From Octopus sinensis (taxonomy: Eukaryota), in NCBI RefSeq assembly GCF_006345805.1, contig NW_021824946.1, positions 1 to 17,141 of the forward strand: a DNA stretch of 17,141 bases. The letters run 5' to 3'. Positions 1 to 17,141 of the stretch are shown here, in pieces. The translations under genes and the position numbers were made by a program. The notes under the pieces were generated by a model that was not told where the DNA came from, did not search any database, and worked only from the letters and a program-made list of their open reading frames with translations. Positions within the stretch are counted from its first letter, which is position 1; every line of letters starts with the position of its first letter.

Positions 1-99
1 AAATTTAAAGGAATGCATAATACAGGATACACTTAAAGCAGAATATGTTTGATGCGTGTGTGTGCGTGTGTGTAAATCATGCATGACAGAGTCACCCTT

Positions 100-400
100 C
101 TGATTATTCTTCGTCGTCCTCATAATGCGTGTCGTTCTCTTAAACGTTGGTTCGGGTTCTCCCTGTTTACCTATTTCTCCGTTCTATTTAACATCTCAAA
201 AGCCAGAAAAATAGATATCCGCAAGAGTGTTATTGCGTACAGTAGGTCGCTGGTCGTCCTGTTAAACTTCGCCTGACTGCTCGGGTCAGAGGTCGAAGGA
301 GACGATCTCATTTTTTTTCAGAACAAAGAGATTCTGATTTCGCGCCTTTTTGTGCATTGGTATTTTACGACCAATGATTCTTGGGTCTGATTTCGAATCC
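100..400. promoter_or_regulatory. CpG-rich promoter-like region with opposed CCAAT boxes and an E2F-type site
   Basis: Many CpGs in 100-400 versus marked depletion in the following kb. ATTGG 356-360, CCAAT 371-375, TTTCGCGC 338-345, TTCGAA 392-397. Direction of transcription is not determinable. Confidence 0.4.
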
Positions 401-869
401 AAGCTTTGAGAAGGAAGTGCTAATTCTTACATATGTATCATTATGAAATTGAATTGAAAGTATTTTAGAAAGCCAACACTGATCTAGCTTGTTATAAAAG
501 AGTGTAAACAAAAGCAAACTCAAAACACTTCAGCTTTTGCCTTATATTTCAATATTTCAGTCTTAAAAAGCCTTTTCGAAGTATTTGTAAGACCAGCTAA
601 ACTCAGTCAATTTTCTCTTTATAAAGCTAACTATTGAAATACAAGGTAATTCTTAGTGGAAATATAAGGAGATGCTTAATGTTTGAGGATCTATTCCTTA
701 TTTTACTACTACTATATTGTTTTTACATATTTCATTGCATACATAGGCACTTGGCACTGATTGGTAGGCTGATTCATAAATAGATAAATTCCTGCAGGTA
801 GCTTTCTCATGAAAGAAAGAATTAATGCACCATTCTTCCTATGACTTCAAATCAGAAATAGATGGAGCT

Positions 870-892
870 ACACACACACACACACACACACA
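870..892. repeat. (CA)n microsatellite
   Basis: Perfect dinucleotide run. Confidence 0.95.
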
Positions 893-1465
893 TTTATATA
901 AAGAAAGAAGAGAGAGGGGGGGAGCTGGTATTATCAGGATGTTTCATTTCAAAGTCTGTATTTCTTTATACAGTTGAACAAGATATATGTTTTCCTTTGC
1001 ATGAGAAGTCAGCATGAGTTATCTACAAATCTGGCTAAGGAAGTTCAAGAGTGACTGGAGCTAAGTGCTCTCACACTTTCTTATATGTCATGGATAGGAT
1101 TTTACATAGTATTTATGATTAACATAATTTTGGTATGGTTTTTCAAATAACTAACTACTTTGTATCATAGTGTATACTATCATGTCAGTGACACTAGAAA
1201 GCTGGTCTTTCTGGTTTCTTCTACACTGTAACACTTTTTCATTTAGAGGTTACTGCTCTCCTAGTAAAGTTGTTGTCGTTCCAGCTTGCAAATTTCTTGC
1301 CTCTTACATGTCTAGTCTAGAAATCTTTTCATTAAATGTTAGGTTTGTTCATGTTTCCCCACACTTGTAGGTGGATCTCCCTACTGCAGCTGTGAAATCA
1401 CATCCTTCTATGACTTCCACCATTTACCTAGCATCGTTATCATAGTATTTATTTATCTAGCTTAT

Positions 1466-1533
1466 GTGCCACACTATGAGACTGAACCCAAGACCATGTG
1501 GTTGAGAAGCAATCTTCTCAGCCACACAGCCAT
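1466..1533 (-). mobile_element. tRNA-derived SINE head fragment (family of 16752-17141)
   Basis: Reverse complement (tggctgtgtggctgagaagattgcttctcaaccacatggtcttgggttcagtctc) aligns by eye to the A-box/B-box head of the copy at 16752. Confidence 0.75.
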
Positions 1534-1957
1534 CATTGGGCCTTAATCACACTTGTGCTCTGTGTTATCATATATGATATATATATATAATTATTTTGAA
1601 TTAAACATAAATTATTTCCTCTTTTCTATGACATATTTAATTATAGATACCACTTTCTTATTGTTAATAACATTAAAGAATAATCCAAAAACTAAATGTA
1701 TGTGTGGATACTGTTTTCTGTTTTTGGTTGGGGTTGTAGCATTGATAGGTGCATGGCAGTAGTGATCATTCATGTCTATGATAATGTGTTTGATTGACAG
1801 TATTCAAAGAGGAATCAGATAAAAAATTTAAAGAAAACAAAAAATGATTGTATGAAAATCATATATTCTATTGGTTAAAATAATTACAGTAATTTAGTGT
1901 TACGGACATGCTCTTCTTGTAACTCTAATCTGTTACCATGACCATTTCTGCAACCGA

Positions 1958-2079
1958 AACCACCACCATTACTACTACCATTGCTACTCCTCTTCTTACT
2001 ACTACTACTTCTACCATCAATACTACTACTACCAGTACCTCCACTACCTCTATTACTACTACTACTACTACTACTACTA
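1958..2079. repeat. Imperfect (ACT/ACC)n trinucleotide microsatellite
   Basis: Direct reading; source of the poly-T, poly-L and poly-S ORFs at 1884-2172. Confidence 0.9.
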
Positions 2080-2109
2080 AAAATTTTAAAAACATTAGTA
2101 ACTTTCAAA

Positions 2110-2905
2110 GTTTGGCACAAGGCCAGCATTTTTAAGGGGAGGAAAAAATGTAAATTACATTCACCCCTATAATTGGTACTTAATCAAACTTAAAGCAATG
2201 AAAAGCAAAGTTGATTCAGGCAAGATTTGAACTCAGAACATAAAGTATGAACAGAAGTATCACTGATCATTTTTTCCATGTTCTTATAATCCTGCTCTTA
2301 ATGATAATAGTTTCAACTTTTAGTACTTTTAGTGGGTAGGACAAGTTGATTACATTATCCCTCTACTAAATTAGTATTTTATATTATTGACCCCAAAAAG
2401 ATGAAAGGCAAAGCTGAGTTCAGTGGTATTTGAATTCAGAATGTAGAGCCAGAAGAAATACCACAAAGCTTCTTGTCCAACACAGCAATGATCCTGCCAG
2501 CTCATGCCCTTATAATAATAAGGTTAAATGTCTCAAATTTAAACATAAGGCCAGCAATATTTAGGGGGGAGGATAAATCAATTATATCGACCCCAGGGTT
2601 CAACTAATACTTATTTTATCAAGCCTTCTCCCCTCCCTCTAAGGATCAAAGGCAGTCAATCTTCACAGAATTTTAACACAACATAAAGATGAAGAAAATG
2701 CTGCAAAGCATTTTGTCTAGCATACTAATGATTTTTGTCACCTCACTACCTTAATAATAATTATTATTATTGTTGTTGTTGTTGTTGTTGTTATAATGTC
2801 TATCAAATTTTGCACAAATGCAACAATTTTTGGATTGAGGGGATGAGTCAAGTTGACTTCAGTGGGATTAGAACTCAGAATGTAAAGAATTGGAAGCAAT
2901 ACCAA
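2110..2905 (-). mobile_element. Cluster of four decayed copies of one SINE family (~2110-2300, ~2330-2511, ~2540-2752, ~2805-2905)
   Basis: Repeated blocks tttggcacaaggccagca, gatgaaaggcaaag and atttgaactcagaa in the same orientation. Minus-strand reading contains a B-box-like gttctgagttcaaat. Copies are separated by (TAA)/(TTG) runs. Confidence 0.7.
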
Positions 2906-3174
2906 AAAGAATTTAGTTGTATAGTTTCTTTTTTGTTTATGCAACATGTGTAAGGTGGTACGAATTAAATAGTTTATACACAAACTTTCTTGTTTTGTCA
3001 TGTGTATATATTCTGTGACATACCCAACTGTGGATTCCTAACAATGCATGGTTAATAATGTAACTTCTTGTGGTCTCCCATTAGATACACACATGGCACA
3101 AAACTACCTCCCTCAATACTACTCCCTCCTCTGTTGAGGGTTTTTGTCTTGTAAAATACTTTGTGATTTCACCA

Positions 3175-3355
3175 GGGCTGCTGTCACATAAAAGGCACCT
3201 AGTACAGTGTGTAAAGTGGTGAGCATTAAGAAAAGCATCCAGCTGTAGAAGCCATGCCAGAACAGACAGTTGAACTTGGCACAGTCTTCTAGCTTACCAG
3301 CTTCTAACAAAGCATGTAAGCATTGAAAACAGACTTTAAATGATGAAGTGATGAC
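3175..3355 (+). mobile_element. Old copy of the SINE-like family also at 10365-10542 and 14836-15286
   Basis: cacataaaaggcacc...aagaaaagcatccagctgtagaagccatgccagaacagac...aatgatga matches those copies by eye. Confidence 0.7.
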
Positions 3356-3373
3356 ATAACTATATATCCATGC

Positions 3374-3384
<11 letters not shown>

Positions 3385-3428
<44 letters not shown>

Positions 3429-3455
3429 GAGAAAGAGAGAGAGAGAGAGAGAGAG
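3385..3455. repeat. (TA)n plus (GA)n compound microsatellite
   Basis: Direct reading. Confidence 0.9.
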
Positions 3456-5247
3456 TTGAGTGAAGGAGAAAAGGAGTAGATCCAACTTACAGAGTGCAAA
3501 TGACAGAGAAAATTAAAGGGGAGGATATAAGTCTAACAGCTGTTTCTGGGAGAATGTTGGTAGATGTATTCATCACAGTATGTAGGCCATAATAGAAGGC
3601 AATCAGAATTGGATAAATTGAGCTGCCATCAAGAAGTGCAAAGGTGGACAGATTAAATGTGGAGAGCAAGCAGTATTAGAGGAAGGAGGTAGGATGGAGT
3701 TATGGCGAGTGTTAAGACAGAATGGTGAGAGGAGATAAATAAACTAGTTCAGAAAGAGAGTGGCGGCTTAAGAATGGAAGTATTAAGGAAGTGGTAGTCG
3801 ATGTGGAGAGTTGAGAGATGAGTGGGAGGGATGCAGTGGGTAGTAATTGAAGGGTAGTCAATTATTGGGTTTGTGTATAGTGTTGAGATAGTGAGAAAAG
3901 GGATGACAATTATTTGAGGGAGGGAAAGACTCTAATTAGGCAACAGAAGGAGATTACTAAAGTATGAACAAAGATATGAGAGAAGATAAAGGGAGGTGCA
4001 TAGAGTGGGGAGTTAGTCGGTGATAGGGTAGCTGTGGTTAGTACTATAATGAAGGTGGATTGGTGGTGGAGGGGGAGTACTGAGGTTTGCAAAGGTGTAT
4101 GAAATTGGGTAGAGGGGTGGATGTTGATTGTTTAGTAGCTAATTGATTGTGGTAGTTGCAAGTGCTCTTGATTGAAGGCGAGAATTGAGACAATGGGGAA
4201 AGAATACAATTTGTGAGGGAGGTGGTATGTTGTGGGTAAGAAGAATTTTCAAAGGTAATCATGAGAAGGATGGTATTACTGGAGAAGATGCATTGCTTCG
4301 CTAACCTTGTTGTACCCCAAGGTTAATTATAATTAATGATAATCATTGTTATGAGATTATATAGATTTTAATAAAATGAGTAAATGATGAGTAGAACCTG
4401 TGTTTACAAGAGAGTATTACATCTGAGAATCTATTAAGTAATCAGGGATTGTGGTTGCAAAGGATGATTAGTGATCCCTTACAAATACCAAGGTTTGAGC
4501 TGAACGAGGGAGCCTCCTTATGATGGATCGGGATAGAGTAGTTTTGGGATTTGTGTTATGTATTTAAGTTGCTAAGGTGGTAGAATATTTAGAATTTGGA
4601 TTGGAGAAAGAGTCCATTTGTGCTCAGTAGCAGTGCTTGAAATTGACATTCTGTCGTTATAGACCCTTACTTGGTGGGAGCATAGTATTATTACTCTGCA
4701 CTTGTAGACTACATTTTTGCATTGACAGAAACCTCCAAGAGGGCTGAATTGAAACACCTAATAATTGCAAGTTTTCCTACCTGTTCTGTGTGGTTTTCCT
4801 ACCTACTCTGTGGTCTTCCTACCTGCTCTAGAAAGAAATGTGCAATTTTTGCCTTAAGTTTAGTGTTGGAGATATAAGAGTTCTTTTTACAGAAACCACT
4901 TATCTGCTGAGCTTGGTTATAGTGTGGGGCATGATTATTAAAAATATCTTTGTTAGTAGATAAGCTGGAGATTCTGATAAAAATATCTGTGACTATTCTA
5001 TTAGGAGTAAGTTTAGGGTAATTTGATAGGATGTAGATATATTGTAATGATTGATAGGGTTTCTAGAAAGGGTGATATAGATTTAAGATGTTTCCAGTGT
5101 GTGTCATTTTCGAATGAGATACCTAGGTTATGATTTTTTAAAATCCTGTGGAATTGATTCCCTGTAAAGGTATGAGTCTAAGTTTGGATCATTTGAGCAC
5201 TACTAAGTGTCTTCTACACTGAAAATCTCTGGACCTCATCTTCTGGC
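3456..5247 (-). mobile_element. Decayed, 5'-truncated Penelope-like retroelement (RT thumb + GIY-YIG at ~4390-5240; 3456-4390 probably pLTR/5'-ORF part)
   Basis: Minus-strand translation across frameshifts gives FKNHNLGISFEND, LQYIYILSNYPKLTPNRIVTDIFIRISSLSTNKDIFNNHAPHYNQAQQISGF (cf. PLE SNHP...IFNNAAPYYNxAL..SG), PLGGFCQCKNVVYKC and LLNRFSDVILSCKHR (cf. LLNKRSE..KCRH). The 3456-4390 assignment is weaker (FNLS-like motif near 3650). Confidence 0.75.

Positions 5248-5313
<66 letters not shown>
5248..5313. repeat. (TA)n(TG)n microsatellite
   Basis: Direct reading. Confidence 0.95.
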
Positions 5314-5329
5314 ATATTGTGTAAACATA

Positions 5330-6586
5330 CAGGAGTTGGACAAAATAATGGAAACACCTTAAAATTTCAAACAAATTTATTTTAATATGGGGTAGGGCTG
5401 CCTGTAGCAGTAATTACAGCTTGAATTCTACAAGGTATGAACTTGTACAAAGTTTGAATTGTTTCCAAAAGAATTTTTGTCCATTCTTCAGCTAAAAGAG
5501 TCCCCAATTCTTGCAGTGATGATGGTGGAGGGTATTGACTCCTTTTCCTGTTTTCCTAAAATGCACCACAAATGTTCATAATATTGAGATCTGGAGGCTG
5601 TGGTGGCAAGATAAGATGTTCAACTTCTCTAGAATGTTTCTCATGCCATTCAGTAACAACTTTAGCTGCTCTATGAATTGGTGCATTATCATCCTGAAAG
5701 ATTGCATTTCCCTTCAGAAACAGTTCTGCAATCATAGGATGAATTTGATCAGATAAAATGCTTAAATAGTCTGCCATGAAGGGAAATCATTGGGCTGGCA
5801 GATTTCCAAGATATAGCCCCCACCTCTCAGATCATCATAGATCCTCCTCCATGTTTAACAGTTGGAAGAAGGTAGTCTGGGTCAAAGGCTTGTTTTGGAT
5901 GTCTCCACATGTATACTCGGCCAGTGGTCAGAAATATGGTAAAAGATGACTTGTCCAAGAAAATGACATTCTTCCACTGCTCTAGGGATCAGTTTTGTAG
6001 GTTTTTACCCCACTCTAAATGCTTTGCAAAGTTGGTTTTTGAAAGTAGTGGTTTTCTGATTGCAGCCTCCCATGAAATCCAGCTTTGTGCAACTCCCAGC
6101 AATCAGTTTTATGGAAACTGGGTTCTTGAGATGGTTATTAAGCTCTACAGTTACTTTGGGAGCTGTACTTTTGTGATCCTTTCTAACAATTTGCGTAAGA
6201 GTCCAACAGTCCTTATCTGAAGGTTTTGGTTTTCTTCCAGAGTTTTGTTTTGACTAGAAGGTTTTTCCCACTTCCTCAAAGGCTGTCATTACTTTTGAGA
6301 CAGGACTTCATGATACACCAAACACTTCGGCTGTTTTCATTACGCTAGCGCCTGCTATACGCACACCACAATTTGACCTCTTTGAAAGTCCAATAGATCT
6401 GTCATTTTAATGAATTTCAGTTAACTTTTTCTGTTGATATCTGAAAAGAAACAGCAATTTTAGCAAAACATATTAAGCAATACTAATAATAATTCAAATA
6501 ACATAAATATAAACAAGCTTTTGACAGTTTTATAGATATTTCAAAATTATGATGCTACATGTTTCCATTATTTTGTCCAACCCCTC
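5330..6586 (-). mobile_element. Full-length Tc1-like DNA transposon (1257 bp), 26-bp TIRs, TA target duplication
   Basis: Left TIR caggagttggacaaaataatggaaac 5330-5355. Right TIR gtttccattattttgtccaacccctc 6561-6586 (24/26 match). TA at 5328-5329 and 6587-6588. Confidence 0.95.
5382..6405 (-). pseudogene. Tc1-family DDE transposase pseudogene (~340 codons, stops and frameshifts)
   Basis: Starts MTDLLDFQRGQIV... and includes SGRKPK, TVKHGGGS, FQDDNAPIH and PPQPPDLNI(I)EHLW. Ends IQAVITATGSPTPY-stop (TAA at plus 5382-5384). Confidence 0.92.
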
Positions 6587-6588
6587 TA

Positions 6589-7000
6589 GATCTTCAGATA
6601 GCTGTTCCTGAACAATGGGTGCCCAGAAAAAGAACTGGTATATAAGACCAATAACATGGGTTTGAACAGTAACAAATACATATATTGGAATGATAGGGAA
6701 CTCCTTCAAATAAAGATATACATTGCACCTGGCTTTGTTCAGAGCCAAAAACAAAAAAAAACACACAATAATCCTAGCCAATATAGTATAGAGACTGAAA
6801 AAGAGAGGTGTGAGCAACATCCAGATAACCTGGAGTATTATTGCTGAGGCCAACAAGTACAGAGGACGAGGCAGGAAATGCAAGCTTTACATCACTGAAA
6901 CATTATACATTATCACACCAAAAGTGAATATTTCAAATATTAGGGATGACACCTTCTCCCCTTGCATGCATAAGCAGCATTTCACACTCTGAAATTTCAA
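6589..7000 (+). mobile_element. Penelope-like GIY-YIG endonuclease relic
   Basis: NGCPEKELVYK, TYIGMIGNSFK*RYTLH, ITWSII...RKCKLYITETLYII, ISNIRDDTFSPCMHK: PLE-type GIY-YIG with stops and frameshifts. 3' UTR may extend to ~7350. Confidence 0.85.
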
Positions 7001-7499
7001 GCAAATATCCCCACCTACTCTGTCTCCCGTGCAACCTGGATAAATTTTCATTCCAAACATCAGTTATACGCATTATATGAACTTCATGCATAAAAAAACA
7101 CATGACCTCATAAACTTATGCTGCGCTCCTCTCACAGATATATATGGGTCTCACACATATCCATGACATTACAAGTTATATACAAACTTATGAACCCATA
7201 ACACCATAAGTATCACATGAATTATGTGAAAGATATGTGAAACCTCACAATAATGAGTACACACCCAAACAGACATACTACAGATCCAGAGTTTGCACCC
7301 GCTGACGGCTGCAGAGAAATTCAATTTTGGACTTTCTTCTATCGAAGGCATTCTAACAAAAATGCTTCCGTATAAATGGTGAAAATATTGTCAGTTTTTG
7401 TTTCACTTTTAACACGTAATACTGAAATAGTGGAGAAGATATGATATTGCTATGGGCTCGCCTTAAACAAGAAGTCGAACGTTTTTTTGATCATGAAAG

Positions 7500-7611
7500 T
7501 ACATGGACCCTAAGTAAGGCATGTGTGAAATTTGAATGAAATTGGTTGTGTAGTTCTCAAGTTTTAGGGAAACACACAGACAGACACATTCTCAGTTTTA
7601 TATATATATAG
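7500..7611 (+). mobile_element. Possible end of a non-autonomous Helitron/Helentron-like repeat
   Basis: gtgaaatttgaatgaaattggttgtgtagttctc...acagacagacacattctcagttttatatatatatag resembles termini of such elements, from recollection only. Confidence 0.3.
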
Positions 7612-7688
7612 AAATTATATATATATATATATATATATAATATAATATATATATATTATATATTTATATATATATATATATATTATAT

Positions 7689-7721
<33 letters not shown>

Positions 7722-8039
7722 ATTTTATATATATATTTTAATATATATTATATATATATATATTTTTTATATATATATATATATATTTTTATTAATTATA
7801 TATTTATATATATATTTATATATATATTATATTTTTATATATATATATATATATTATTTATATATATATATATTTTAATATATATATATATTATTATTTA
7901 TATATATATATATATATAATATTTTTTATATATATATATATATATATATTTTATATATATATATATATATATTTTTTTATATATAATATTTATTATATAT
8001 ATAATATTTTTATATATATATATATATTTTATATATATA
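7600..8039. repeat. Long degenerate (TA)n/A+T-only low-complexity tract
   Basis: ~430 nt almost exclusively A/T. Confidence 0.95.
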
Positions 8040-8040
8040 G

Positions 8041-8488
8041 CTAAAACTCTATTCTCTCCAACGTCGTCGTGAGCGCTACATCATCTGCATGATGTGGAAA
8101 ATATTCCATCAGCATGCCCAAATGATGTTGGCATCACCTTAAGGTACATCCAAGCTTGGGCCCCTGCCATCCGCCCAAAACAAAAATCGCACTCTCATCT
8201 CATAACACAATACGGCACAATTTTCACCTCAATTGCCCCGCTCTCTTTAACATTACACCAAAAACACATTAAAACAAAACTTACCCTATAGGTTCAAGAA
8301 GTCTTTGGACAGATTCCTTCAAGAAATCCCGGATAAACCCTACACACCCGGATTGTCTCTGTAAACTAACTCTCTACTTGAGTGGGCCATAGTGCCCAAT
8401 TCTGACTTGAAAGACTTCACCAGGTGGTGCTATTAAGTTATACATGCCTGGGCCTAATGGCCGAACCTATCAAGTATCAAGTTCAAAG
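8041..8488 (+). mobile_element. 3' end of a CR1-group LINE (5'-truncated, frameshifted ORF2 C-terminus)
   Basis: LKLYSLQRRRERYIICMMWKIF...FKKSLDRFLQEIPDKP...NSLLEWA is typical of invertebrate CR1-like ORF2 ends. Ends in a short tandem tail atcaagtatcaagt. Confidence 0.85.
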
Positions 8489-8489
8489 T

Positions 8490-8506
8490 ATATATATATA
8501 TATATA

Positions 8507-8548
<42 letters not shown>

Positions 8549-8765
8549 ATATATATATATTTTTTTTATATATATATATATATTTTTATATATATATATA
8601 TATATTTTTATATATATATATTTTTATATATTTTTATATATATTTTTATATATATATATATATATTTTTATATATATATATGTATATATATATATTTTTT
8701 ATATATATATATATTTTTTATATTATATATTTTTTTATATATAGTATATAATATGTGTGTATATA
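8490..8765. repeat. Degenerate (TA)n/T-run low-complexity tract
   Basis: Direct reading; source of the YI-repeat ORFs. Confidence 0.95.
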
Positions 8766-8829
8766 TGCAGTTAATTTTAGTACCATGCACTACACACTGA
8801 AATAATAAGTTTTGCATCTTTTCTTAAAG

Positions 8830-8871
8830 GTACTGAAGATAATTATGCGACTATTCCAGATGAAGCTCTCA
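8830..8871 (+). CDS. Internal exon A (42 nt, phase 1-1): (G)TEDNYATIPDEAL
   Basis: Acceptor tttgcatcttttcttaaAG, donor GTaagtata, open frame, joins in frame to 12657. Confidence 0.65.
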
Positions 8872-8920
8872 GTAAGTATAATTACCACCAAATGACAAAT
8901 AATTTTGCATTGGTTTCAAT

Positions 8921-8998
8921 GTTTGGCACAAGGCCAGCAAATTTTTAGGAGGGAGAAATCAATTTCATCAACCCATTGCTCAATCTGTACTTACTTTA
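8921..8998 (-). mobile_element. SINE fragment (family of 2110-2905)
   Basis: gtttggcacaaggccagcaaatttttaggagggag matches the copies at 2110 and 2540. Confidence 0.7.
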
Positions 8999-9012
8999 TG
9001 TGTATGTGTGTA

Positions 9013-9059
<47 letters not shown>

Positions 9060-9083
9060 TTACTTACTTATATATATATACTT

Positions 9084-9350
9084 ACACCAACCCTATACAT
9101 ACACATGTCCAGACCCCGCATACGCACTTATACTCTCTCACACACACACACACACACCTATACATACCAATACGTACTAATACATACTAATACATACTAA
9201 TACATACACCAACCCCATACATACGCACGTCCAGACCAATCTTACGCACTAATACTCTCTCATACACACACACACACACACACACCCTTATACATACTAA
9301 TACATACACCAACCCTATACATACACACATCCAGACCCCTCCCACGCACT
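9084..9350. repeat. ~100-120 bp tandem repeat (about 2.3 units) built on CA/TACATAC simple repeats
   Basis: acaccaaccc(t/c)atacatac...ccagacc...acgcact recurs at ~9085, ~9207 and ~9307. Confidence 0.8.
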
Positions 9351-9522
9351 TTTAGCTGGTCCCTCAACCCTTTTATCACCCTATTATCTCCCCTTATTTC
9401 GCTCTCTCGCGTCTCATGTTTGATCTTTGACCTCTGGCCGAAATCAGATCGCCATGTTGATTCGTTAGCTACTGCACGCATTTTTTTCTCTCCTTCTTTC
9501 TGTGTTTTTCTCTCTCTGTGTA

Positions 9523-9560
9523 TCTTTCTGTTGAAGAGCGTAGGCTCGAAACGTTAAAGA
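9523..9560 (+). ncRNA. Minimal type I hammerhead-like motif (extra-A variant), probably inactive copy
   Basis: Stem I ucuuu/aaaga; core CUGUUGA+A (A6 mutated to U); stem II GAGC-guag-GCUC; GAA; palindromic ACGU stem III; GUU triplet. Confidence 0.5.
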
Positions 9561-9680
9561 CTTGTTTTATTTATATTTCCTGAGCGCCATACTAATACAA
9601 TTGTTCGTTTGTTTTCCACCTGCCTTCGTCTTTTGTTTATTTTCATAAAGCTTCCCGTTATATATATATATATATATATA

Positions 9681-9827
9681 GTGGAGGCACAATAGCCCAG
9701 TTGTTAGGGCAGCATACTTGCAGTCACATCTGTGGAGTGCTCAGCCACTTGCACGTTAATTTCATGAGCCAGCGGTTCCATTAATCAGATCAAATGGAAC
9801 CCTCGTTGTCGTAACTGACAGAGTACC
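9681..9827 (+). mobile_element. tRNA-derived SINE with internal deletion
   Basis: A-box-like head gtggaggcacaatagcccagttgttagggcagc; B-box region missing; flanked by (TA)n on both sides. Confidence 0.65.
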
Positions 9828-9999
9828 ACCACCATATATATATACAGTTTGATGAAAAGTTACCCAACAGCAAATCAAATTTCCATAAATACTCTCTGCT
9901 GTCATTCTGTATTGACTCAAATGGAAAAATGTGTCACTCAAGAAGGACTTCAGTTTGAACAATTTCCATGATGTTTTACATTTAGTTGCTTTTATTAAA

Positions 10000-10364
10000 C
10001 CCCGTGCCGGTGACACGTAAAAGCACCGTCCGTTCGTGGCCGGTTGCCAGCTCTGTCTGGCCCCGTGTCGGTGGCACGTAAAAGCACCATCCGTTCGTGT
10101 CCGTTGCCAGCATCGCCTGGCCCCGTGCCGGTGACACGTAAAAGCACCATCCGTTCGTGGCCGTTCGCCAGCTCTGTCTGGCCCCCGTGTTGGTGGCACG
10201 TAAAAGCACCATCCGCTCGTGGCCGTTTGCCAGCATCGCCTGGCCCCGTGCCGGTGACACGTAAAAGCACCATCCGTTCGTGTCCGTTGCCAGCATCGCC
10301 TGGCCCCGTGCCGGTGACACGTAAAAGCACCATCCGTTCGTGGCCGTTCGCCAGCTCTGTCTGG
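10000..10364 (+). repeat. GC-rich minisatellite, six 60-62 bp units, within a SINE-like element
   Basis: Units start at 10000, 10061, 10121, 10182, 10244, 10304. Consensus ccccgtgccggtgacacgtaaaagcaccatccgttcgtggccgttgccagc(tctgt|atcgc)ctgg. Confidence 0.95.
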
Positions 10365-10542
10365 CACCTGTGCAGGTGGCACGTAAAAAACACCCACTAC
10401 ACTCGCAGAGTGGTTGGCGTTAGGAAGGGCATCCAGCCGTAGAAACACTGCCAGATCTGACTGGGCCTGACGAAGCCTTCCAGCTTCACAGACCCCAGTT
10501 GACCCGTCCAACCCATGCTAGCATGATGATGATGATGATGAT
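10365..10542 (+). mobile_element. 3' body of SINE-like retroposon with (GAT)n tail
   Basis: gcacgtaaaaaacacccactacactc...ggcgttaggaagggcatccagccgtagaaac...ccatgctagcatgatgatgat; homologous to 15100-15286. Confidence 0.85.
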
Positions 10543-10621
10543 TCAGTTGTTAAACATAAGTAAATCTTGGAATTAAATGGTTTTGATTTGCTGTCCGGTG
10601 ATTTTGGCCAGCCCTTAACGC

Positions 10622-11035
10622 ATTGGGCTGAGGAATAATTCATAGGCCTTTTCTTCACATTTAACAATGTGCACGGAAATAAAATACATTGGCAAAACGT
10701 TTTATGTTATTTGAGAGAAATTTCTGCTCAACAAGATAATGTATTTTGATTTTTGTGCATTTTCAGATCATTAAAATGCACTTTCAAGAGGAAAAAACTT
10801 AGCATTTTCGACACCATTTGCTTTTTCATTTAATCAATTTGTTAATCCTGCCAAAGCTGCTTTTGAGATTTGTCCTGTGTATTGAGAAGGAGCAATTTCT
10901 CAAACTACTACCCACCATTGGTTTTTGAGCTTCAAAAATGGGAATTTTGACCTCAAGGATGGATTACACAGCAGTCAACCAATTCAGTTCAATGAAAAGT
11001 GATTGAATCATCTTCTTCACAAAAATTCACATAAA
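10622..11035 (+). mobile_element. Mariner relic: 5' TIR-like end and N-terminal HTH part of the transposase (ATG 10776)
   Basis: MHFQEEKT*HFRHHLLF..FNQ..AKAAFEICPVY*EGAISQTTTHHWF..FKNGNFDLKDGLHSSQPIQFNEK*LNHLLHKN; attgggctgaggaataattcat resembles a mariner TIR. Confidence 0.85.
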
Positions 11036-11076
11036 TATGAACTTACTGTGCTTTGAAACACATCTTATATATATAT

Positions 11077-11111
<35 letters not shown>

Positions 11112-11138
11112 ACACACACACATATATATATATATATA

Positions 11139-11214
11139 CTTTATTTAAAGCAGCAGAAAATTCAACAAAATCTGTTACTCATTGGAGGCATCTACATCAT
11201 TTTGACAGCCTCCA
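11139..11214. mobile_element. Terminal fragment of the same repeat family as the 16539-16662 hairpin
   Basis: 11139-11180 matches 16539-16581 with one indel and one mismatch; followed by hairpin tggaggc/gcctcca. Confidence 0.75.
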
Positions 11215-11235
11215 GAGAAGCATACATACACACGT

Positions 11236-11282
<47 letters not shown>

Positions 11283-11349
11283 TATATACACACACATACG
11301 TTCGTGCTGTCTACTTGACCTCCACTCTCATATCTTCTTCCATTCTGTA

Positions 11350-12030
11350 TTTATAGTGATGATACTTCAGAATCAGGGATGCTGGTGTGTAAGGTTGTAA
11401 GAGTTTGGGAGAAAAGGAGGTGAATGCAAACCATGGAATAAAACAGGTCAAATGAACATAGGAGTTGTAATAAATCATGAACAGGGAAAGGATTTACGTA
11501 TATAAGTGGACACAGTAAGAAAAAGGAATAGATGCTGACTGGAAATAGTACAAGGGAAAGGAAGTGGCAACTCACAGTACAGAGATGGCAATATGTATGG
11601 TATAAATGTATGGTGTATTCTGCTTTTGTCTCTTACAGCAGCAGAATAGCACTTTCGACAGGAGAATGATAGAGGGCTCATTATAGGGTCATGAGTTGTG
11701 GGGCTGGCAGTTGTGATTGGTGGGGAAATTAAGAAAGGGATACCGATTTGAAGGGTGGAGGATCATTTGTGGTAGGAACATGGAATGGATGTCTGTTGGA
11801 AGTGGCAGCAGATGTAAGATGTGGCGATTAGTGGAAAAAGGGAAAATCAATAACAACAGTGGAGGTTAGCTCATTGATGGTAAGGATAGAGGACAAATGT
11901 CAATAGGAGGTGAACCATACTTTGGAGATGTTTTTAATGGCAGGAAGAGGAAATGTGAAGAAGAGAAAGATGCAGTTTAGAAGAGCTGATTTAGTTCGGT
12001 TCTTGGGGTAGCATTGTGTGAAAACATTGT
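11350..12030 (-). mobile_element. Highly decayed Penelope-like (linker/GIY-YIG) fragment
   Basis: Minus-strand remnants CQPHNS (cf. RQPPNL), FSCRKC, PCT and CPLIYV (cf. C..YIG). Purine-rich + strand like the other PLE relics. Confidence 0.4.
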
Positions 12031-12656
12031 TGCATATAAAATATACACTATCTATATAATAATTTGCTTCTTTCTTCACCTGTTATACTATAGTTTGTTA
12101 GAGAGGTGGAAGTGGAATGAGTGAGAGGTTGAGTAAAAGTGAGAGAAAAAGGGAGAAATGTGGGTAGAGAAGCAAGAAGAAGAGAGGAGTATAATAATAC
12201 ACTAAGGTCAAATGCATCACGTAGTTAGTTGAGGGGGGAGGCAAAGAGCAAGACACAACTACAATGAGAGGAAAGTGGGAGAGAGAGAAGTGTTAATGAC
12301 ATGCTGTAGGGTGGAAAGAGAAAGAGGGAAATGTTAAAGACATGAAGAGGGGAATTACATGGTTAAAATGTTTGTTGAAGAGGTAGAGAGAAAGAGAGAA
12401 ATATAAGGTGCTTAGCAGAAGGAAATTTCAAAATCATATACTATTTTGCAACTGGAAGTGAAATCACTTAGCAAAATACAAATAACAATCATCCTTTCTT
12501 TCTTAAATAGCTTTGCTTAATCTCTTTCGTTCTGTGGAATTTCCACAGATCTCACTAGTATTTTATTTTTTTTAGTTACTTTTTGTACAATATCAAAATA
12601 TTAAAACTATCCTCTCCAAACAATAAATGTGCACATCTTTCTATAATTTTTTGAAG

Positions 12657-12716
12657 CTAATGAAGAGCAATATGCTGAAGCTAGTGGGCCCAGTTATTTA
12701 GAATTGAAACCAGCAG
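12657..12716 (+). CDS. Internal exon B (60 nt, phase 1-1): TNEEQYAEASGPSYLELKPA
   Basis: Acceptor tctttctataattttttgaAG, donor cag|GTaagtata, open frame in phase with exons A and C. Confidence 0.7.
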
Positions 12717-12935
12717 GTAAGTATAAACAATATTGTTAGTACACAGCATGATCTTAGAAATTATCTTAAACAGTCATGAAAGCTAACAGTCATGAAATGT
12801 ATCATTCTCTAACTTTTATCTTTTAATATGTGTGTATGAGTGTGTTTGAGTCTGTCTCATTAGCATTTATGATTGTAGTATCAACACAATACTAACATAA
12901 CGCTATTTATTGTTTTTATTTCTAATTTTTTAAAG

Positions 12936-12977
12936 ACATGAAGATTTCTTACGTTAATGTTTCAAGGAAACCTGATG
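12936..12977 (+). CDS. Internal exon C (42 nt, phase 1-1): DMKISYVNVSRKPD
   Basis: Acceptor tttttatttctaattttttaaAG, donor atg|GTaagtata, open frame. Confidence 0.7.
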
Positions 12978-13081
12978 GTAAGTATATAAGCAATCGAATA
13001 ATAAAATTTCATTCATTAGAGCAAGAGTTAGCAACATTTTGGTTCACTCTTTCTTTGAGTAGTATAGGCAGCTTAATGCAT

Positions 13082-13438
13082 GTCTTTCATTTGTTCCAGT
13101 CATTGGACTGCAGCCATGCTAAGGCACCACTTTCAAGGGTTCAGTCCAACAAATCCACCCGAGTACTTATTATTTTTAAGCCTTTTACTTATTCTATTGG
13201 TTTCTTTTGCTAAACTGCTAAGTTCTGTGGATGTGAACAAACCAACACAAGTGTCAAGTGGTGATGGGGATCAAACGCAAAGGCACACACACTCCCTTAT
13301 ATATATACCAAATCCATTCACAAGATTTTGGTCCGCCCAGGATTATAGCAGAATACACTCGCCCAACGTGCCTCATCATATGACGAAACCCAGACCCATT
13401 TGTTTGGAAATTAAACTTCTTACCTCACAGCCACACCT
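13082..13438 (-). mobile_element. Full-length older copy of tRNA-derived SINE (family of 16752-17141)
   Basis: Reverse complement aligns by eye from head (aggtgtggctgtgaggtaag) to tail (gcatggctgcagtccaatgactggaacaaatgaaa). Confidence 0.85.
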
Positions 13439-14201: not shown

Positions 14202-14319
<118 letters not shown>

Positions 14320-14324
14320 GATAT

Positions 14325-14671
14325 ATGGAGTTAAACGCAGGTTTATTCAAATTCTTTTACTTCCGACATGTTTCAAAGATATCACTGGTATTATTCCAAA
14401 GGAATTACCCCTCCTCTTTCTATAGGCTACCTTTGACGCTGTATCCTCTAACGTTTTTTTTAAAAACAAACTTAATAGCGTTCAGTCAATCACTATACAT
14501 ATCCATCATTTTCTGTTAAAACATCTTAATGACGAGTTTCATTTCTTCATTTCCTGAAGAGAAGATTACGTTGTTTTACACCATTTTATTCCTTTGGAAT
14601 AATACCAGTGATATCTTCGAAACATGTGTTGGAAGTAAAAGAATTTGCATAACACCTGCGTTTAACTCCAT
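14325..14671. mobile_element. PLE pLTR-like element with 81/84-nt terminal inverted arms
   Basis: 14325-14405 versus reverse complement of 14588-14671: 78 identities in 84 columns by hand alignment; contains a hammerhead motif. Confidence 0.85.
14550..14636 (+). ncRNA. Type I hammerhead ribozyme motif, canonical core
   Basis: CUGAAGA 14554-14560; stem II gaagau/aucuuc (14561-14566/14613-14618); GAA 14619-14621; stem III ACA-ug-UGU; GUU triplet ending 14630; stem I uuuc/ggaa. Confidence 0.65.
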
Positions 14672-14835
14672 TTATTTATTTATATATATTATACAAAATA
14701 TTTCACATAAACCTGGTGTTTCTACCTTTAAAAATAAGGTTACAACCTTTTTACTTGTATGATTTCTTGCTACCCCGTAAATATTTGTCTATTTTTTTCT
14801 GTGTTAATTGTTTCGAAATTGAACCAATCCTATGA

Positions 14836-15286
14836 CTGGCACCTGGCAGTTGCCAGTGCTGCTGGACTGACTCGTGTGCAGGTGGCAAGTAAAGAAACAC
14901 CGTTCCAACCTTGTGTTTCAGGAGACCTATTGAGTGAAGTACATCAACATCAAAAATCAATGGAAATTGCAGTTGTGATCCCTCTGCCAGTGGCACGTAA
15001 AAAGCACCATCCGAACGTGGCTGAATCCAGCGCTGCCTTGACTGGCTTCCATGCCAGTGGAACGTGAAAAGCACCAACTGATCGTGGCCATTGCCAGCCT
15101 TGCCTGGCACGTAAAAAGCACCCACTACACTCACGGAGTGGTTGGTGTTAGGAAGGGCATCCAGCTGTAGAAACACTGCCAGATCAGACAGGAGCCTGGT
15201 GCAGCCTTCTGGCTTCCCAGACCCCGGTCGAACCGTCCAATCCATGCTAGCATGGAAAATGGACGTTAAACAATGATGATGATGAT
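14836..15286 (+). mobile_element. SINE-like retroposon with degenerate internal repeats and (GAT)n tail
   Basis: Three cacgtaaaaagcacc-type units, then ggaagggcatccagctgtagaaac...ggacgttaaacaatgatgatgatgat. Confidence 0.85.
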
Positions 15287-15487: not shown

Positions 15488-15835
15488 GATTAAATAATTA
15501 ACTTTAGAAAAATTAGAAGAAAAGTTTTTTTAAAGGAATATTTCTATAGTAGTGTTCAGATATAAGTAGCATTCTGCCTTTCTCTGACTTCCTTGTTTGC
15601 ACTTGTGTGTTGGAGGTAGTTGTGAGTTCTTGGTAGGGTAGTAGGGGAAGAAGGCTGATGAGGAAAGGGGGTGGGAGAATCTGGGAGTGCCCTGATGGTC
15701 GTATTTTGAATGGTCAGTGGCGGCTGGCAGTCGCAGTTCAATTCAGGAGAATATTTCTATTGAAAGGCTTGTTTATAGAATTTGCGTAGGTGTTATACTA
15801 AGAAACGTTAGTGACAAAGTTAAGGGGTAGAAGGT

Positions 15836-16001
15836 GGAGAAGTAGAAGAAGAAGAAGATGACGATGTTGATGATGATGATGATGAAGAAGAAGAAGAAGG
15901 AGAAGGAGAAGATGACGATGATGGTGATGGTGGTGATGGTTATGACGACGATGATGATGATAATGATGATGATGAAGAAGAAGAGGAAGAAGAAGAAAAA
16001 A
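15836..16001. repeat. Compound (GAA)/(GAT)/(GGT)n microsatellite
   Basis: Direct reading; source of the poly-H/L and poly-M/K ORFs. Confidence 0.9.
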
Positions 16002-16165
16002 ACAGAGAAGGGAAAATATGAATGGGTTAAAGTAGTGAGGTGTTGTATGACTTGAAGTTGGCATGTTATGGATTATAGCTGTGATTTTAGCTGTGATTAG
16101 TAATGGATTCTTTGGAATGTAATATTTGTGTGTGAATATTTCTTTTATTCTAAAGTTGAGGTATA

Positions 16166-16510: not shown

Positions 16511-16538
16511 TATATATATATATATATATATATATATA

Positions 16539-16662
16539 CTTTATTTAAAAGCAGCAGAAAATTCAACAAAACCTGTTACTCTGAGTTTCACGTTCCCGTT
16601 CGTCGAACATTTTTTGCTAGAATAACAGGTTTTGTTGAATTTTCTGCTGCTTTTAAATAAAG
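16539..16662. repeat. Perfect 40-bp inverted repeat with 44-nt spacer
   Basis: 16539-16578 is the exact reverse complement of 16623-16662. Confidence 0.97.
16574..16609 (-). ncRNA. Minimal type I hammerhead-like motif with variant core
   Basis: Minus strand ugu-UCGACGA-ACG-ggaa-CGU-GAA-ACU-cag-AGU-A-aca; core deviates at positions 3 and 4; GUA triplet. Confidence 0.55.
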
Positions 16663-16751
16663 CATATTACTCTACCCCTGGTATTTGAGTACTCTTTTTT
16701 CCACCTTGTTTCACATTTATGTGTTTACTCTGGTATATATATATATATTTA

Positions 16752-17141
16752 GATGCAGGAGTGGCTGTGTGGTAAGTAGCTTGCTAACCAACCACATGGT
16801 TCCGGGTTCAGTCCCACTGCGTGGCACCTTGGGCAAGTGTCTTCTGCTATAGCCCCGGGCCGACCAATGCCTTGTGAGTGGATTTGGTAGACAGAAACTG
16901 AAAGAAGCCTGTCGTATATATGTATATATATATGTGTGTGTGTCTGTGTTTGTACCCCCAACATCGCTTGACAACCGATGCTGATGTGTTTACGTCCCCG
17001 TCACTTAGCAGTTCAGCAAAAGAGACCGAAAGAGTAAGTACTAGGCTTAAAAAGAATAAGTCCCGGGGTCGATTTGCTCGACTAAAGGCGGTGCTCCAGC
17101 ATGGCCACAGTCAAATGACTGAAACAAATAAAAGAGTAAAA
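16752..17141 (+). mobile_element. Young tRNA-derived SINE with CORE-like central motif
   Basis: A-box tggctgtgtgg 16762-16772, B-box ggttcagtccc 16805-16815, accttgggcaagt (CORE-like), internal (TA)/(TG) run, A-rich tail at the window end. Confidence 0.9.

What the first reader, a model, noticed from the sequence alone, without database searches (positions are those of the whole stretch)
8830..12977. Modular Tyr-motif microexon array: likely signalling tail built by exon duplication
Seen: three exons of 42, 60 and 42 nt are all phase 1-1, all end in the donor GTAAGTATA, all follow a T-run-(A/G)AAG acceptor, and all have Tyr at codon 6. The spliced peptide (G)TEDNYATIPDEAL-TNEEQYAEASGPSYLELKPA-DMKISYVNVSRKPD carries YATI, YAEA, YLEL and YVNV, with acidic residues before the first two Tyr. 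Established: ISYVNV fits the ITIM consensus (S/I/V/L)xYxx(I/V/L), and YxN is the Grb2-SH2 motif. Inference: an unrecognised invertebrate receptor or adaptor whose phospho-Tyr docking sites can be combined by exon skipping without frameshift.
Basis: partly seen in the sequence, partly recalled or inferred. Interest (0 to 1): 0.7.

Follow-up and report, generated by a model that had tools for sequence, protein, structure and literature searches.

The report
Three small in-frame tyrosine-motif exons
Three very short exon-like segments with near-perfect splice signals sit in a repeat-rich animal intron landscape and would encode a tyrosine-rich, acidic peptide that looks like a docking segment for signalling proteins, but the gene cannot be identified from this window and the design principle is already known from other receptors.

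Summary
Three + strand segments (8830-8871, 12657-12716, 12936-12977; 42, 60 and 42 nt) each follow a T-run plus RAAG acceptor. Each ends at GTAAGTATA, is open in one shared frame (phase 1-1) and has a Tyr codon at exon nt 15-17. A shuffle test puts such a triple well beyond chance: 3 observed, mean 0.127 and maximum 2 in 1000 shuffles. They are very probably real coding cassette exons of a + strand gene whose other exons lie outside the window.

ISYVNV fits the ITIM consensus, and YVNV is the classical Grb2 site of LAT and MET. But these short motifs are expected by chance at about 15-20% per four tyrosines. No transmembrane or other exon is in the window. No homologue, Pfam family or solved structure matched, and the protein collection appears to lack this organism, so those negatives weigh little. 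Sequence evidence for exon duplication is weak. The shared TGAAGA hexamer is read in a different frame in exon 3, which points to a splicing enhancer rather than common ancestry.

Tyr-motif tails assembled from skippable exons are already known from PECAM-1 and arthropod Dscam. I rate it a plausible new member of a known kind, of modest interest.

The parts
8810..8829 (+). 3' splice site of exon 1: pyrimidine/T-rich tract ending in ...tttcttaaAG
   Evidence: Read directly. 12 of 15 pyrimidines in my scan.
8830..8871 (+). Candidate exon 1, 42 nt, phase 1-1. Encodes (x)TEDNYATIPDEAL. TGAAGA at exon nt 5-10, Tyr codon at nt 15-17.
8872..8880 (+). 5' splice site GTAAGTATA of exon 1
8872..12656 (+). 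Inferred intron of 3785 nt. It is filled with microsatellites, a composite repeat with 60/183-bp subrepeats (about 9760-10525) and a G-rich block. No phase-compatible exon lies inside.
12657..12716 (+). Candidate exon 2, 60 nt, phase 1-1. Encodes TNEEQYAEASGPSYLELKPA. TGAAGA at nt 5-10, Tyr codons at nt 15-17 and 39-41. The donor context CAG|GTAAGTAT is a perfect consensus.
12717..12935 (+). Inferred intron of 219 nt. An in-frame stop comes after 7 codons, so retention would truncate the protein.
   Evidence: Read directly.
12936..12977 (+). Candidate exon 3, 42 nt, phase 1-1. Encodes DMKISYVNVSRKPD, with the ITIM-pattern ISYVNV, the YxN site YVNV and an NVS sequon. TGAAGA at nt 4-9 is read in a different frame.
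12978..12986 (+). 5' splice site GTAAGTATA of exon 3. The next exon is not identifiable within the window.

Best explanation
These are three consecutive small, symmetric (phase 1-1) protein-coding exons of a multi-exon gene on the + strand of a repeat-rich invertebrate genome. From memory of its interspersed repeats I take the genome to be cephalopod or octopus-like.

The exons are kept recognisable in long, repeat-filled introns by maximal-strength splice signals:
- a T-run plus RAAG acceptor;
- a purine-rich TGAAGA element just inside each exon;
- a GTAAGTAT donor, which is fully complementary to the 5' end of U1 snRNA.

Together they encode a 47-residue acidic, hydrophilic, probably disordered segment with four tyrosines. 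I infer that this segment is most likely intracellular and works as a set of phosphotyrosine docking motifs:
- YATI and YLEL are YxxI/L sites.
- ISYVNV is both a Grb2-type pYxN site and an ITIM-pattern site.

Because every exon is a multiple of 3 in the same phase, inclusion or skipping would add or remove docking sites without changing the frame.

What is shown: the anatomy, the phases and the non-random signals. What is inferred: that the exons are expressed, where the peptide lies in the cell, that it is phosphorylated, which proteins bind it, and that any skipping occurs.
For: - Exact exon anatomy.
- All three + strand GTAAGTATA copies sit at these donors, with 0.28 copies expected on both strands.
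- Three strict phase 1-1 candidates against a mean of 0.127 and a maximum of 2 in 1000 shuffles.
- They are the only phase 1-1 candidates in the window, even with relaxed signals.
- For non-coding exons, the chance that all lengths are 3n and all 45 codons are open in one consistent frame is about 0.003.
- Tyr falls at the same codon in all three exons, about 4e-4 to 1e-3 by chance, judged post hoc.
- TGAAGA lies at exon nt 4-10 in all three, with only 11 + strand copies in 17 kb.
- The peptide has pI 4.2 and GRAVY -0.9, with no Cys, Trp, Phe or His.
- YVNV is the classical Grb2 site of LAT and MET.
- Precedents for tails built from skippable motif exons: PECAM-1 and Dscam.
Against: - These tools give no transcript evidence and no orthologous sequence.
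- No homologue, family or structure matched.
- No transmembrane exon, upstream phase-compatible exon or terminal exon lies in the window, so topology and gene identity are unknown.
- The motif matches are individually unremarkable: ITIM about 21% and YxN about 15% by chance for 4 Tyr.
- Tyr enrichment is only marginal (P about 0.05-0.16).
- The NVS sequon and the acidic residues beside Tyr would equally suit an extracellular, glycosylated or Tyr-sulfated segment.
Confidence: 0.5

Rival explanations
1. The exons are real and coding, but the segment is not a phosphotyrosine docking tail. It could be an extracellular stalk or linker, with N-glycosylation at NVS and tyrosine sulfation in the acidic contexts EDNY and EEQY. 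It could also be a generic disordered linker of a cytosolic or nuclear protein in which the tyrosines have no SH2-related role.
For: - The NVS sequon and the acidic residues next to Tyr.
- Phase 1-1 exons are typical of extracellular modules (established knowledge on exon shuffling).
- There is no transmembrane exon or topology information in the window.
- The motif matches are within chance expectation.
Against: - YVNV is identical to proven Grb2 sites.
- Four YxxΦ-type or YxN contexts fall within 47 residues.
- The closest architectural precedents, PECAM-1 and Dscam, have cytoplasmic tails.
Confidence: 0.25
2. The exons are not real. Three splice-like signal pairs with open frames arose by chance or through local sequence bias in AT-rich intronic or intergenic DNA.
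For: - A loose signal scan gives as many candidates in shuffled sequence as in the real one. At least 3 phase 1-1 candidates appeared in 13 of 200 shuffles.
- There is no expression or conservation evidence.
- No protein in the collection contains any of the three exon peptides.
Against: - The strict test gave 0 of 1000 shuffles with 3 candidates.
- The identical 9-nt donor appears three times against 0.28 expected.
- TGAAGA and the Tyr codon lie at the same exon positions in all three.
- All three lie in unique sequence between repeats.
- The protein collection appears to lack this organism, so its silence is weak evidence.
Confidence: 0.12
3. The exons are real and spliced but belong to a non-coding transcript or an untranslated region. 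The open frame would then be incidental.
For: There is no homologue and no adjoining coding exon in the window.
Against: All three lengths are multiples of 3 and all 45 codons are open in one consistent frame. The chance is about 0.003 for unconstrained exons. A Tyr codon also sits at the same position in each exon.
Confidence: 0.05

Closest known systems
PECAM-1 (CD31) cytoplasmic domain
   Same: The tail is encoded by a series of short exons that are alternatively spliced. Tyr-based inhibitory motifs sit on individual exons, and loss of exon 14 abolishes SHP-2 binding (PMC5664058). This is the same design logic: one motif per small cassette exon, combined by skipping.
   Different: No sequence similarity was found. 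PECAM-1 is a vertebrate protein with six Ig domains, whereas here no ectodomain or transmembrane exon is known. Alternative splicing is not shown here.
Arthropod Dscam cytoplasmic tail
   Same: It is an invertebrate example. Seven include-or-skip cytoplasmic exons carry SH2-binding and ITAM motifs in shrimp. [quoted passage not shown]
   Different: The exon peptides listed in that paper show no real similarity to this peptide beyond a 'YAT' tripeptide. No Pfam family, which would include any Dscam tail family, matched. Some Dscam exon skips shift the frame, whereas here all three exons are symmetric.
Grb2 docking sites of LAT (YVNV x2) and MET (Y1356 YVNV); Shc Y317 from my memory
   Same: The identical four-residue core YVNV is a classical pYxN Grb2-SH2 site (PMC2194190; PMC5344233). 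LAT-type adaptors are also acidic, disordered, Tyr-rich tails.
   Different: Only a 4-5 residue motif is shared. The Pfam search gave no match to LAT or any other family. Function is not implied by the motif alone.
ITAM (YxxL/I-x6-8-YxxL/I)
   Same: YLEL-x8-YVNV spans the exon 2/3 junction with canonical spacing.
   Different: The second +3 residue is Val, not Leu or Ile, so the strict consensus is not met.

Membership tests
ITIM-bearing inhibitory receptor | Sequence (S/I/V/L)xYxx(I/V/L) | tested here: met
   ISYVNV in exon 3. The chance of at least one such match among 4 Tyr is about 21%.
ITIM-bearing inhibitory receptor | The motif lies in the cytoplasmic tail of a transmembrane receptor | tested here: inconclusive
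   No transmembrane or phase-compatible upstream exon lies in 1-8829, and there is no further exon in the window. The rest of the gene is outside the window.
ITIM-bearing inhibitory receptor | Tyr phosphorylation and recruitment of SHP-1/SHP-2/SHIP | not testable with these tools
   This needs phosphoproteomics or SH2 pull-downs.
ITAM | Yxx(L/I)-x6-8-Yxx(L/I) | tested here: not met
   There is no strict match. Only YLEL-x8-YVNV is present, with Val at the second +3 position.
ITSM | TxYxx(V/I) | tested here: not met
   No match.
Grb2-SH2 docking site | pY-x-N core | tested here: met
   YVN(V) in exon 3, identical to the LAT and MET sites. Phosphorylation is untested.
PECAM-1-like modular tail (by architecture) | Several short, in-frame-skippable exons, each carrying a Tyr motif | tested here: met
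   Exons of 42, 60 and 42 nt, all phase 1-1. No junction codon can become a stop, by direct reading.
PECAM-1-like modular tail (by architecture) | Alternative inclusion or skipping observed in transcripts | not testable with these tools
   No RNA data are available.
PECAM-1 / Dscam / LAT (by homology) | Detectable sequence similarity to the family | tested here: not met
   Pfam gave 0 families at E<=10. PDB gave only a chance hit at E=0.79. The protein collection gave no hit, even with a 106-row variant alignment.
Microexon | Length <=27 nt (neuronal definition) or <=51 nt (broad definition) | tested here: inconclusive
   The two 42-nt exons meet only the broad definition. The 60-nt exon meets neither.
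Exon duplicates (paralogous exons) | Sequence similarity between exons and flanks above background | tested here: inconclusive
   E1 vs E3 are 40% identical, against a null mean of 27% and a 95th percentile of 40%. E1 and E2 share 14 of their first 20 nt. Flank similarity is confined to the splice signals. The shared TGAAGA is read out of frame in E3.

The most novel reading that the evidence does not exclude
This is a lineage-specific (cephalopod) transmembrane adaptor or immunoreceptor with no detectable relative. Its ITAM-like unit (YLEL-x8-YVNV) is split across two cassette exons. Splicing could then switch one tail between three states: an ITAM-like activating module (exons 2+3), a lone ITIM/Grb2 site (exon 3 only) and a lone YxxL site (exon 2 only). 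That would be a splice-coded activating/inhibitory toggle in an invertebrate.
Probability: 0.1. Interest if true: 0.6.

Novelty: new member of a known kind. Interest (0 to 1): 0.3.

Why it matters
If the exons are expressed, the locus would add an invertebrate, probably cephalopod, example of a signalling segment whose phosphotyrosine docking sites are packaged one per small symmetric exon. Such an example would help in annotating immune or neural receptors in a group whose tyrosine-based signalling receptors are poorly catalogued. It also shows how very small exons are kept recognisable inside multi-kilobase, repeat-filled introns, through U1-perfect donors and a GAAGA element. It would not change any principle, because PECAM-1 and Dscam already show the same modular logic.

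Tried and rejected
**Homology searches that found nothing**
- Protein search with the 49-aa spliced peptide found nothing.
- I repeated it with an artificial 106-row alignment covering all 5-mers with up to 2 conservative substitutions. It gave 12 candidates, none at E<=10.
I did not work around this. The only contiguous ORF of 30 aa or more around exon 2 holds 19 real residues, too few to reach significance.
- Pfam and PDB searches of the peptide gave nothing.
- The metagenome scan by peptide and by a degenerate exon-3-plus-donor pattern gave nothing.

**Control search**
- The window's Tc1-like transposase ORF found only 8 hits, all ORFs from ENA or JGI metagenome assemblies.
- The collection therefore seems to lack this organism's proteome, and the negative results above carry little weight.

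**Searches for more of the gene**
- Scans for further exons found nothing convincing: relaxed phase 1-1 exons, a terminal exon, and an upstream phase-compatible or hydrophobic exon. The single upstream candidate lies antisense inside the Tc1 remnant.

**Repeat and organism checks**
- The SINE-like repeat gave no tRNA or Rfam match, so its 'tRNA-derived' nature and my octopus attribution rest on memory only.
- A literature search for ITIM in octopus gave nothing relevant.

**Rejected reading**
- I rejected mutually exclusive splicing of E1 and E3. They have equal length and phase, but their peptides are unrelated apart from the Tyr.
Full report
**1. What is in the sequence**

The window is AT-rich (about 22-49% GC) eukaryotic DNA. 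It is full of (TA)n and (CA)n microsatellites and interspersed repeats, and no Rfam family reaches its gathering score.

| Exon | Coordinates | Length | Acceptor, exon and donor |
|---|---|---|---|
| E1 | 8830-8871 | 42 nt | cttttcttaaag, then GTACTGAAGATAATTATGCG...CTCA, then gtaagtata |
| E2 | 12657-12716 | 60 nt | aattttttgaag, then CTAATGAAGAGCAATATGCT...GCAG, then gtaagtata |
| E3 | 12936-12977 | 42 nt | aattttttaaag, then ACATGAAGATTTCTTACGTT...GATG, then gtaagtata |

- In each exon two bases finish a codon and one base is left over, so all are phase 1-1.
- The joined frame reads TEDNYATIPDEAL-TNEEQYAEASGPSYLELKPA-DMKISYVNVSRKPD.
- The Tyr codon occupies exon nt 15-17 in all three.
- All lengths are multiples of 3 in one phase. 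None of the possible alternative junction codons (x|CT, x|AC, A|AC, A|yy, G|yy) can be a stop. Any subset of the three can therefore be skipped in frame.

**2. Is it more than chance?**

- GTAAGTATA occurs five times on both strands against 0.28 expected. No shuffle out of 200 reached five. The three + strand copies are exactly the three donors.
- A loose splice-signal scan does not discriminate. It gives 6 candidate intervals in the real + strand against 6.9 in shuffles, and at least 3 phase 1-1 candidates in 13 of 200 shuffles.
- A strict test asks for an exact GTAAGT donor, a pyrimidine-rich acceptor 20-120 nt upstream and an open phase 1-1 frame. It gives 3 in the real sequence against a mean of 0.127 and a maximum of 2 in 1000 shuffles.
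- With relaxed signals these three are still the only convincing phase 1-1 candidates in the whole window.
- If they were spliced but non-coding, three 3n lengths and 45 open codons in one frame would have a chance of about 0.003.
- A Tyr codon at one shared position in all three has a chance of about 4e-4 to 1e-3, judged post hoc.
- All three lie in unique sequence between repeats.

I conclude that they are very probably genuine coding exons of a + strand gene. These tools give no transcript evidence.

**3. Signals that define the exons**

- Each exon carries TGAAGA at nt 5-10, 5-10 and 4-9. Only 11 + strand copies exist in 17 kb.
- In E1 and E2 the hexamer is read xxT-GAA-GAx (E-D and E-E). 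In E3 it is read ATG-AAG-ATT (M-K-I).
- The same hexamer at the same place but in a different frame points to an RNA-level signal. A purine-rich GAAGA-type exonic splicing enhancer would fit, and this is established knowledge.
- The donors, (CAG)|GTAAGTAT, are fully complementary to the 5' end of U1 snRNA (established knowledge).
- Strong acceptor, enhancer and donor are what tiny exons need for exon definition. Here the introns are at least 8.8 kb, 3785 nt, 219 nt and at least 4.1 kb.
- Direct similarity is weak. E1 vs E3 are 40% identical, against a null mean of 27% and a 95th percentile of 40%. E1 and E2 share 14 of their first 20 nt. The flanks agree only in the splice signals.
- Duplication is possible, above all for E1 and E2, but not shown.

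**4. What the peptide looks like**

- It has 47 residues, pI 4.2 and GRAVY -0.9. It has four Tyr and no Cys, Trp, Phe or His. That is the composition of a disordered segment.
- Motifs found:
  - ISYVNV fits the ITIM pattern.
  - YVN fits YxN.
  - YATI and YLEL are YxxI/L sites.
  - YATI also fits the Csk-SH2 preference as I remember it.
  - There is no ITSM, NPxY, YxxP or YxxM motif.
  - No strict ITAM is present, but YLEL-x8-YVNV spans the E2/E3 junction with canonical spacing and Val at the last position.
- YVNV is the classical Grb2 site of LAT (PMC2194190) and of MET Y1356 (PMC5344233).
- These motifs are short. One ITIM match among four Tyr is expected about 21% of the time and one YxN about 15%. 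The Tyr enrichment is marginal at P 0.05-0.16.
- The NVS sequon and the acidic residues beside Tyr would also suit an extracellular, glycosylated or Tyr-sulfated stretch.

**5. Which gene?**

- No other exon could be found in the window. There was no further phase 1-1 exon, no convincing terminal exon and no upstream phase-compatible or hydrophobic exon.
- Homology searches all failed:
  - the 49-aa peptide;
  - an artificial 106-row alignment covering all 5-mers with up to 2 conservative substitutions;
  - Pfam and PDB;
  - two metagenome scans.
- As a control I searched with the window's Tc1-like transposase ORF (5556-5777, minus strand). It found only 8 hits, all from ENA or JGI metagenome assemblies and at most 75% identical. 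The collection therefore seems to lack this organism's annotated proteome, and the negatives say little about whether the gene is annotated or conserved.
- From memory, the repeat at 16757-17135 resembles the abundant octopus SINE. Neither ARAGORN nor Rfam supports a tRNA origin, so the organism call remains unverified.

**6. Most likely mechanism**

- Shown: three symmetric small exons with maximal splice signals that encode an acidic, Tyr-rich peptide.
- Inferred, with about 0.5 confidence overall: the peptide is part of an intracellular disordered region. Its tyrosines are phosphorylated by Src- or Syk-type kinases and then bind SH2 proteins. Grb2/Drk would bind at pYVNV, and SHP-2/Csw or other SH2 proteins at ISYVNV, YLEL and YATI. 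Inclusion or skipping of individual exons would tune which sites are present.
- Rivals:
  - real exons with another role, such as an extracellular or generic linker (0.25);
  - chance pseudo-exons (0.12);
  - non-coding exons (0.05).

**7. Comparison with what is known**

- The design is not new.
- PECAM-1 has eight alternatively spliced cytoplasmic exons, and loss of exon 14 abolishes SHP-2 binding (PMC5664058).
- Shrimp Dscam has seven include-or-skip tail exons carrying SH2-binding and ITAM motifs. In Daphnia, ITIM or ITAM inclusion varies (PMC6851185).
- This locus works like those, if it works at all. It is not a member of either family by sequence.
- It is best filed as a possible new member of a known kind.

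**8. Verdict**

- Interest is modest at 0.3.
- The most novel reading still open is a splice-coded toggle between ITAM-like and ITIM/Grb2 states in a lineage-specific cephalopod receptor. I give it about 0.1 probability.

Noticed in passing
window 8834-8839, 12661-12666, 12939-12944: The hexamer TGAAGA sits at nt 4-10 of all three exons but is read in a different frame in exon 3. It looks like a shared purine-rich exonic splicing enhancer rather than protein-level conservation.
   Followed up: partly
window 13083-13438 (inverted) and 16757-17135; fragment 1466-1532: These are copies of one SINE-like interspersed repeat, 68-79% identical to each other. From memory it resembles the abundant octopus SINE. 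ARAGORN and Rfam find no tRNA-like head.
   Followed up: partly
window 9760-10525, 14985-15254, 3181-3428: This is a GC-rich (about 49%) composite repeat. Its copy inside the 3.8-kb intron contains 6.4 tandem 60-bp units, with a 183-bp higher-order period and 87-92% identity.
   Followed up: partly
window 5324-6097 (- strand): A degenerate Tc1/mariner-type transposase remnant (its relatives carry the DDE_3 domain). It is 80% identical at the DNA level over 794 nt to an 84-kb ENA metagenome-assembly contig (ERZ21867824:ctg105049l, locus L001). That assembly therefore probably contains DNA of a related animal.
   Followed up: partly
window 3430-4300, 11350-12450, 15550-16060: Three G-rich, C-poor blocks, with GC skew up to +0.6 on the + strand and no mutual blastn similarity. 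The last one contains a (GAT/GAA)n trinucleotide array. Their origin is unexplained.
   Followed up: no
window 14297-14405 / 14588-14701 and 16522-16667 (half copy at 11122-11180): Two short inverted-repeat, MITE-like elements. The arms of the first are 88.6% complementary. The second is a palindromic element with a 97%-identical half copy inside the large intron.
   Followed up: no
window 12717-12935: The intron between exons 2 and 3 is 219 nt, a multiple of 3. It has an in-frame stop after 7 codons, so intron retention would truncate the protein after exon 2.
   Followed up: yes
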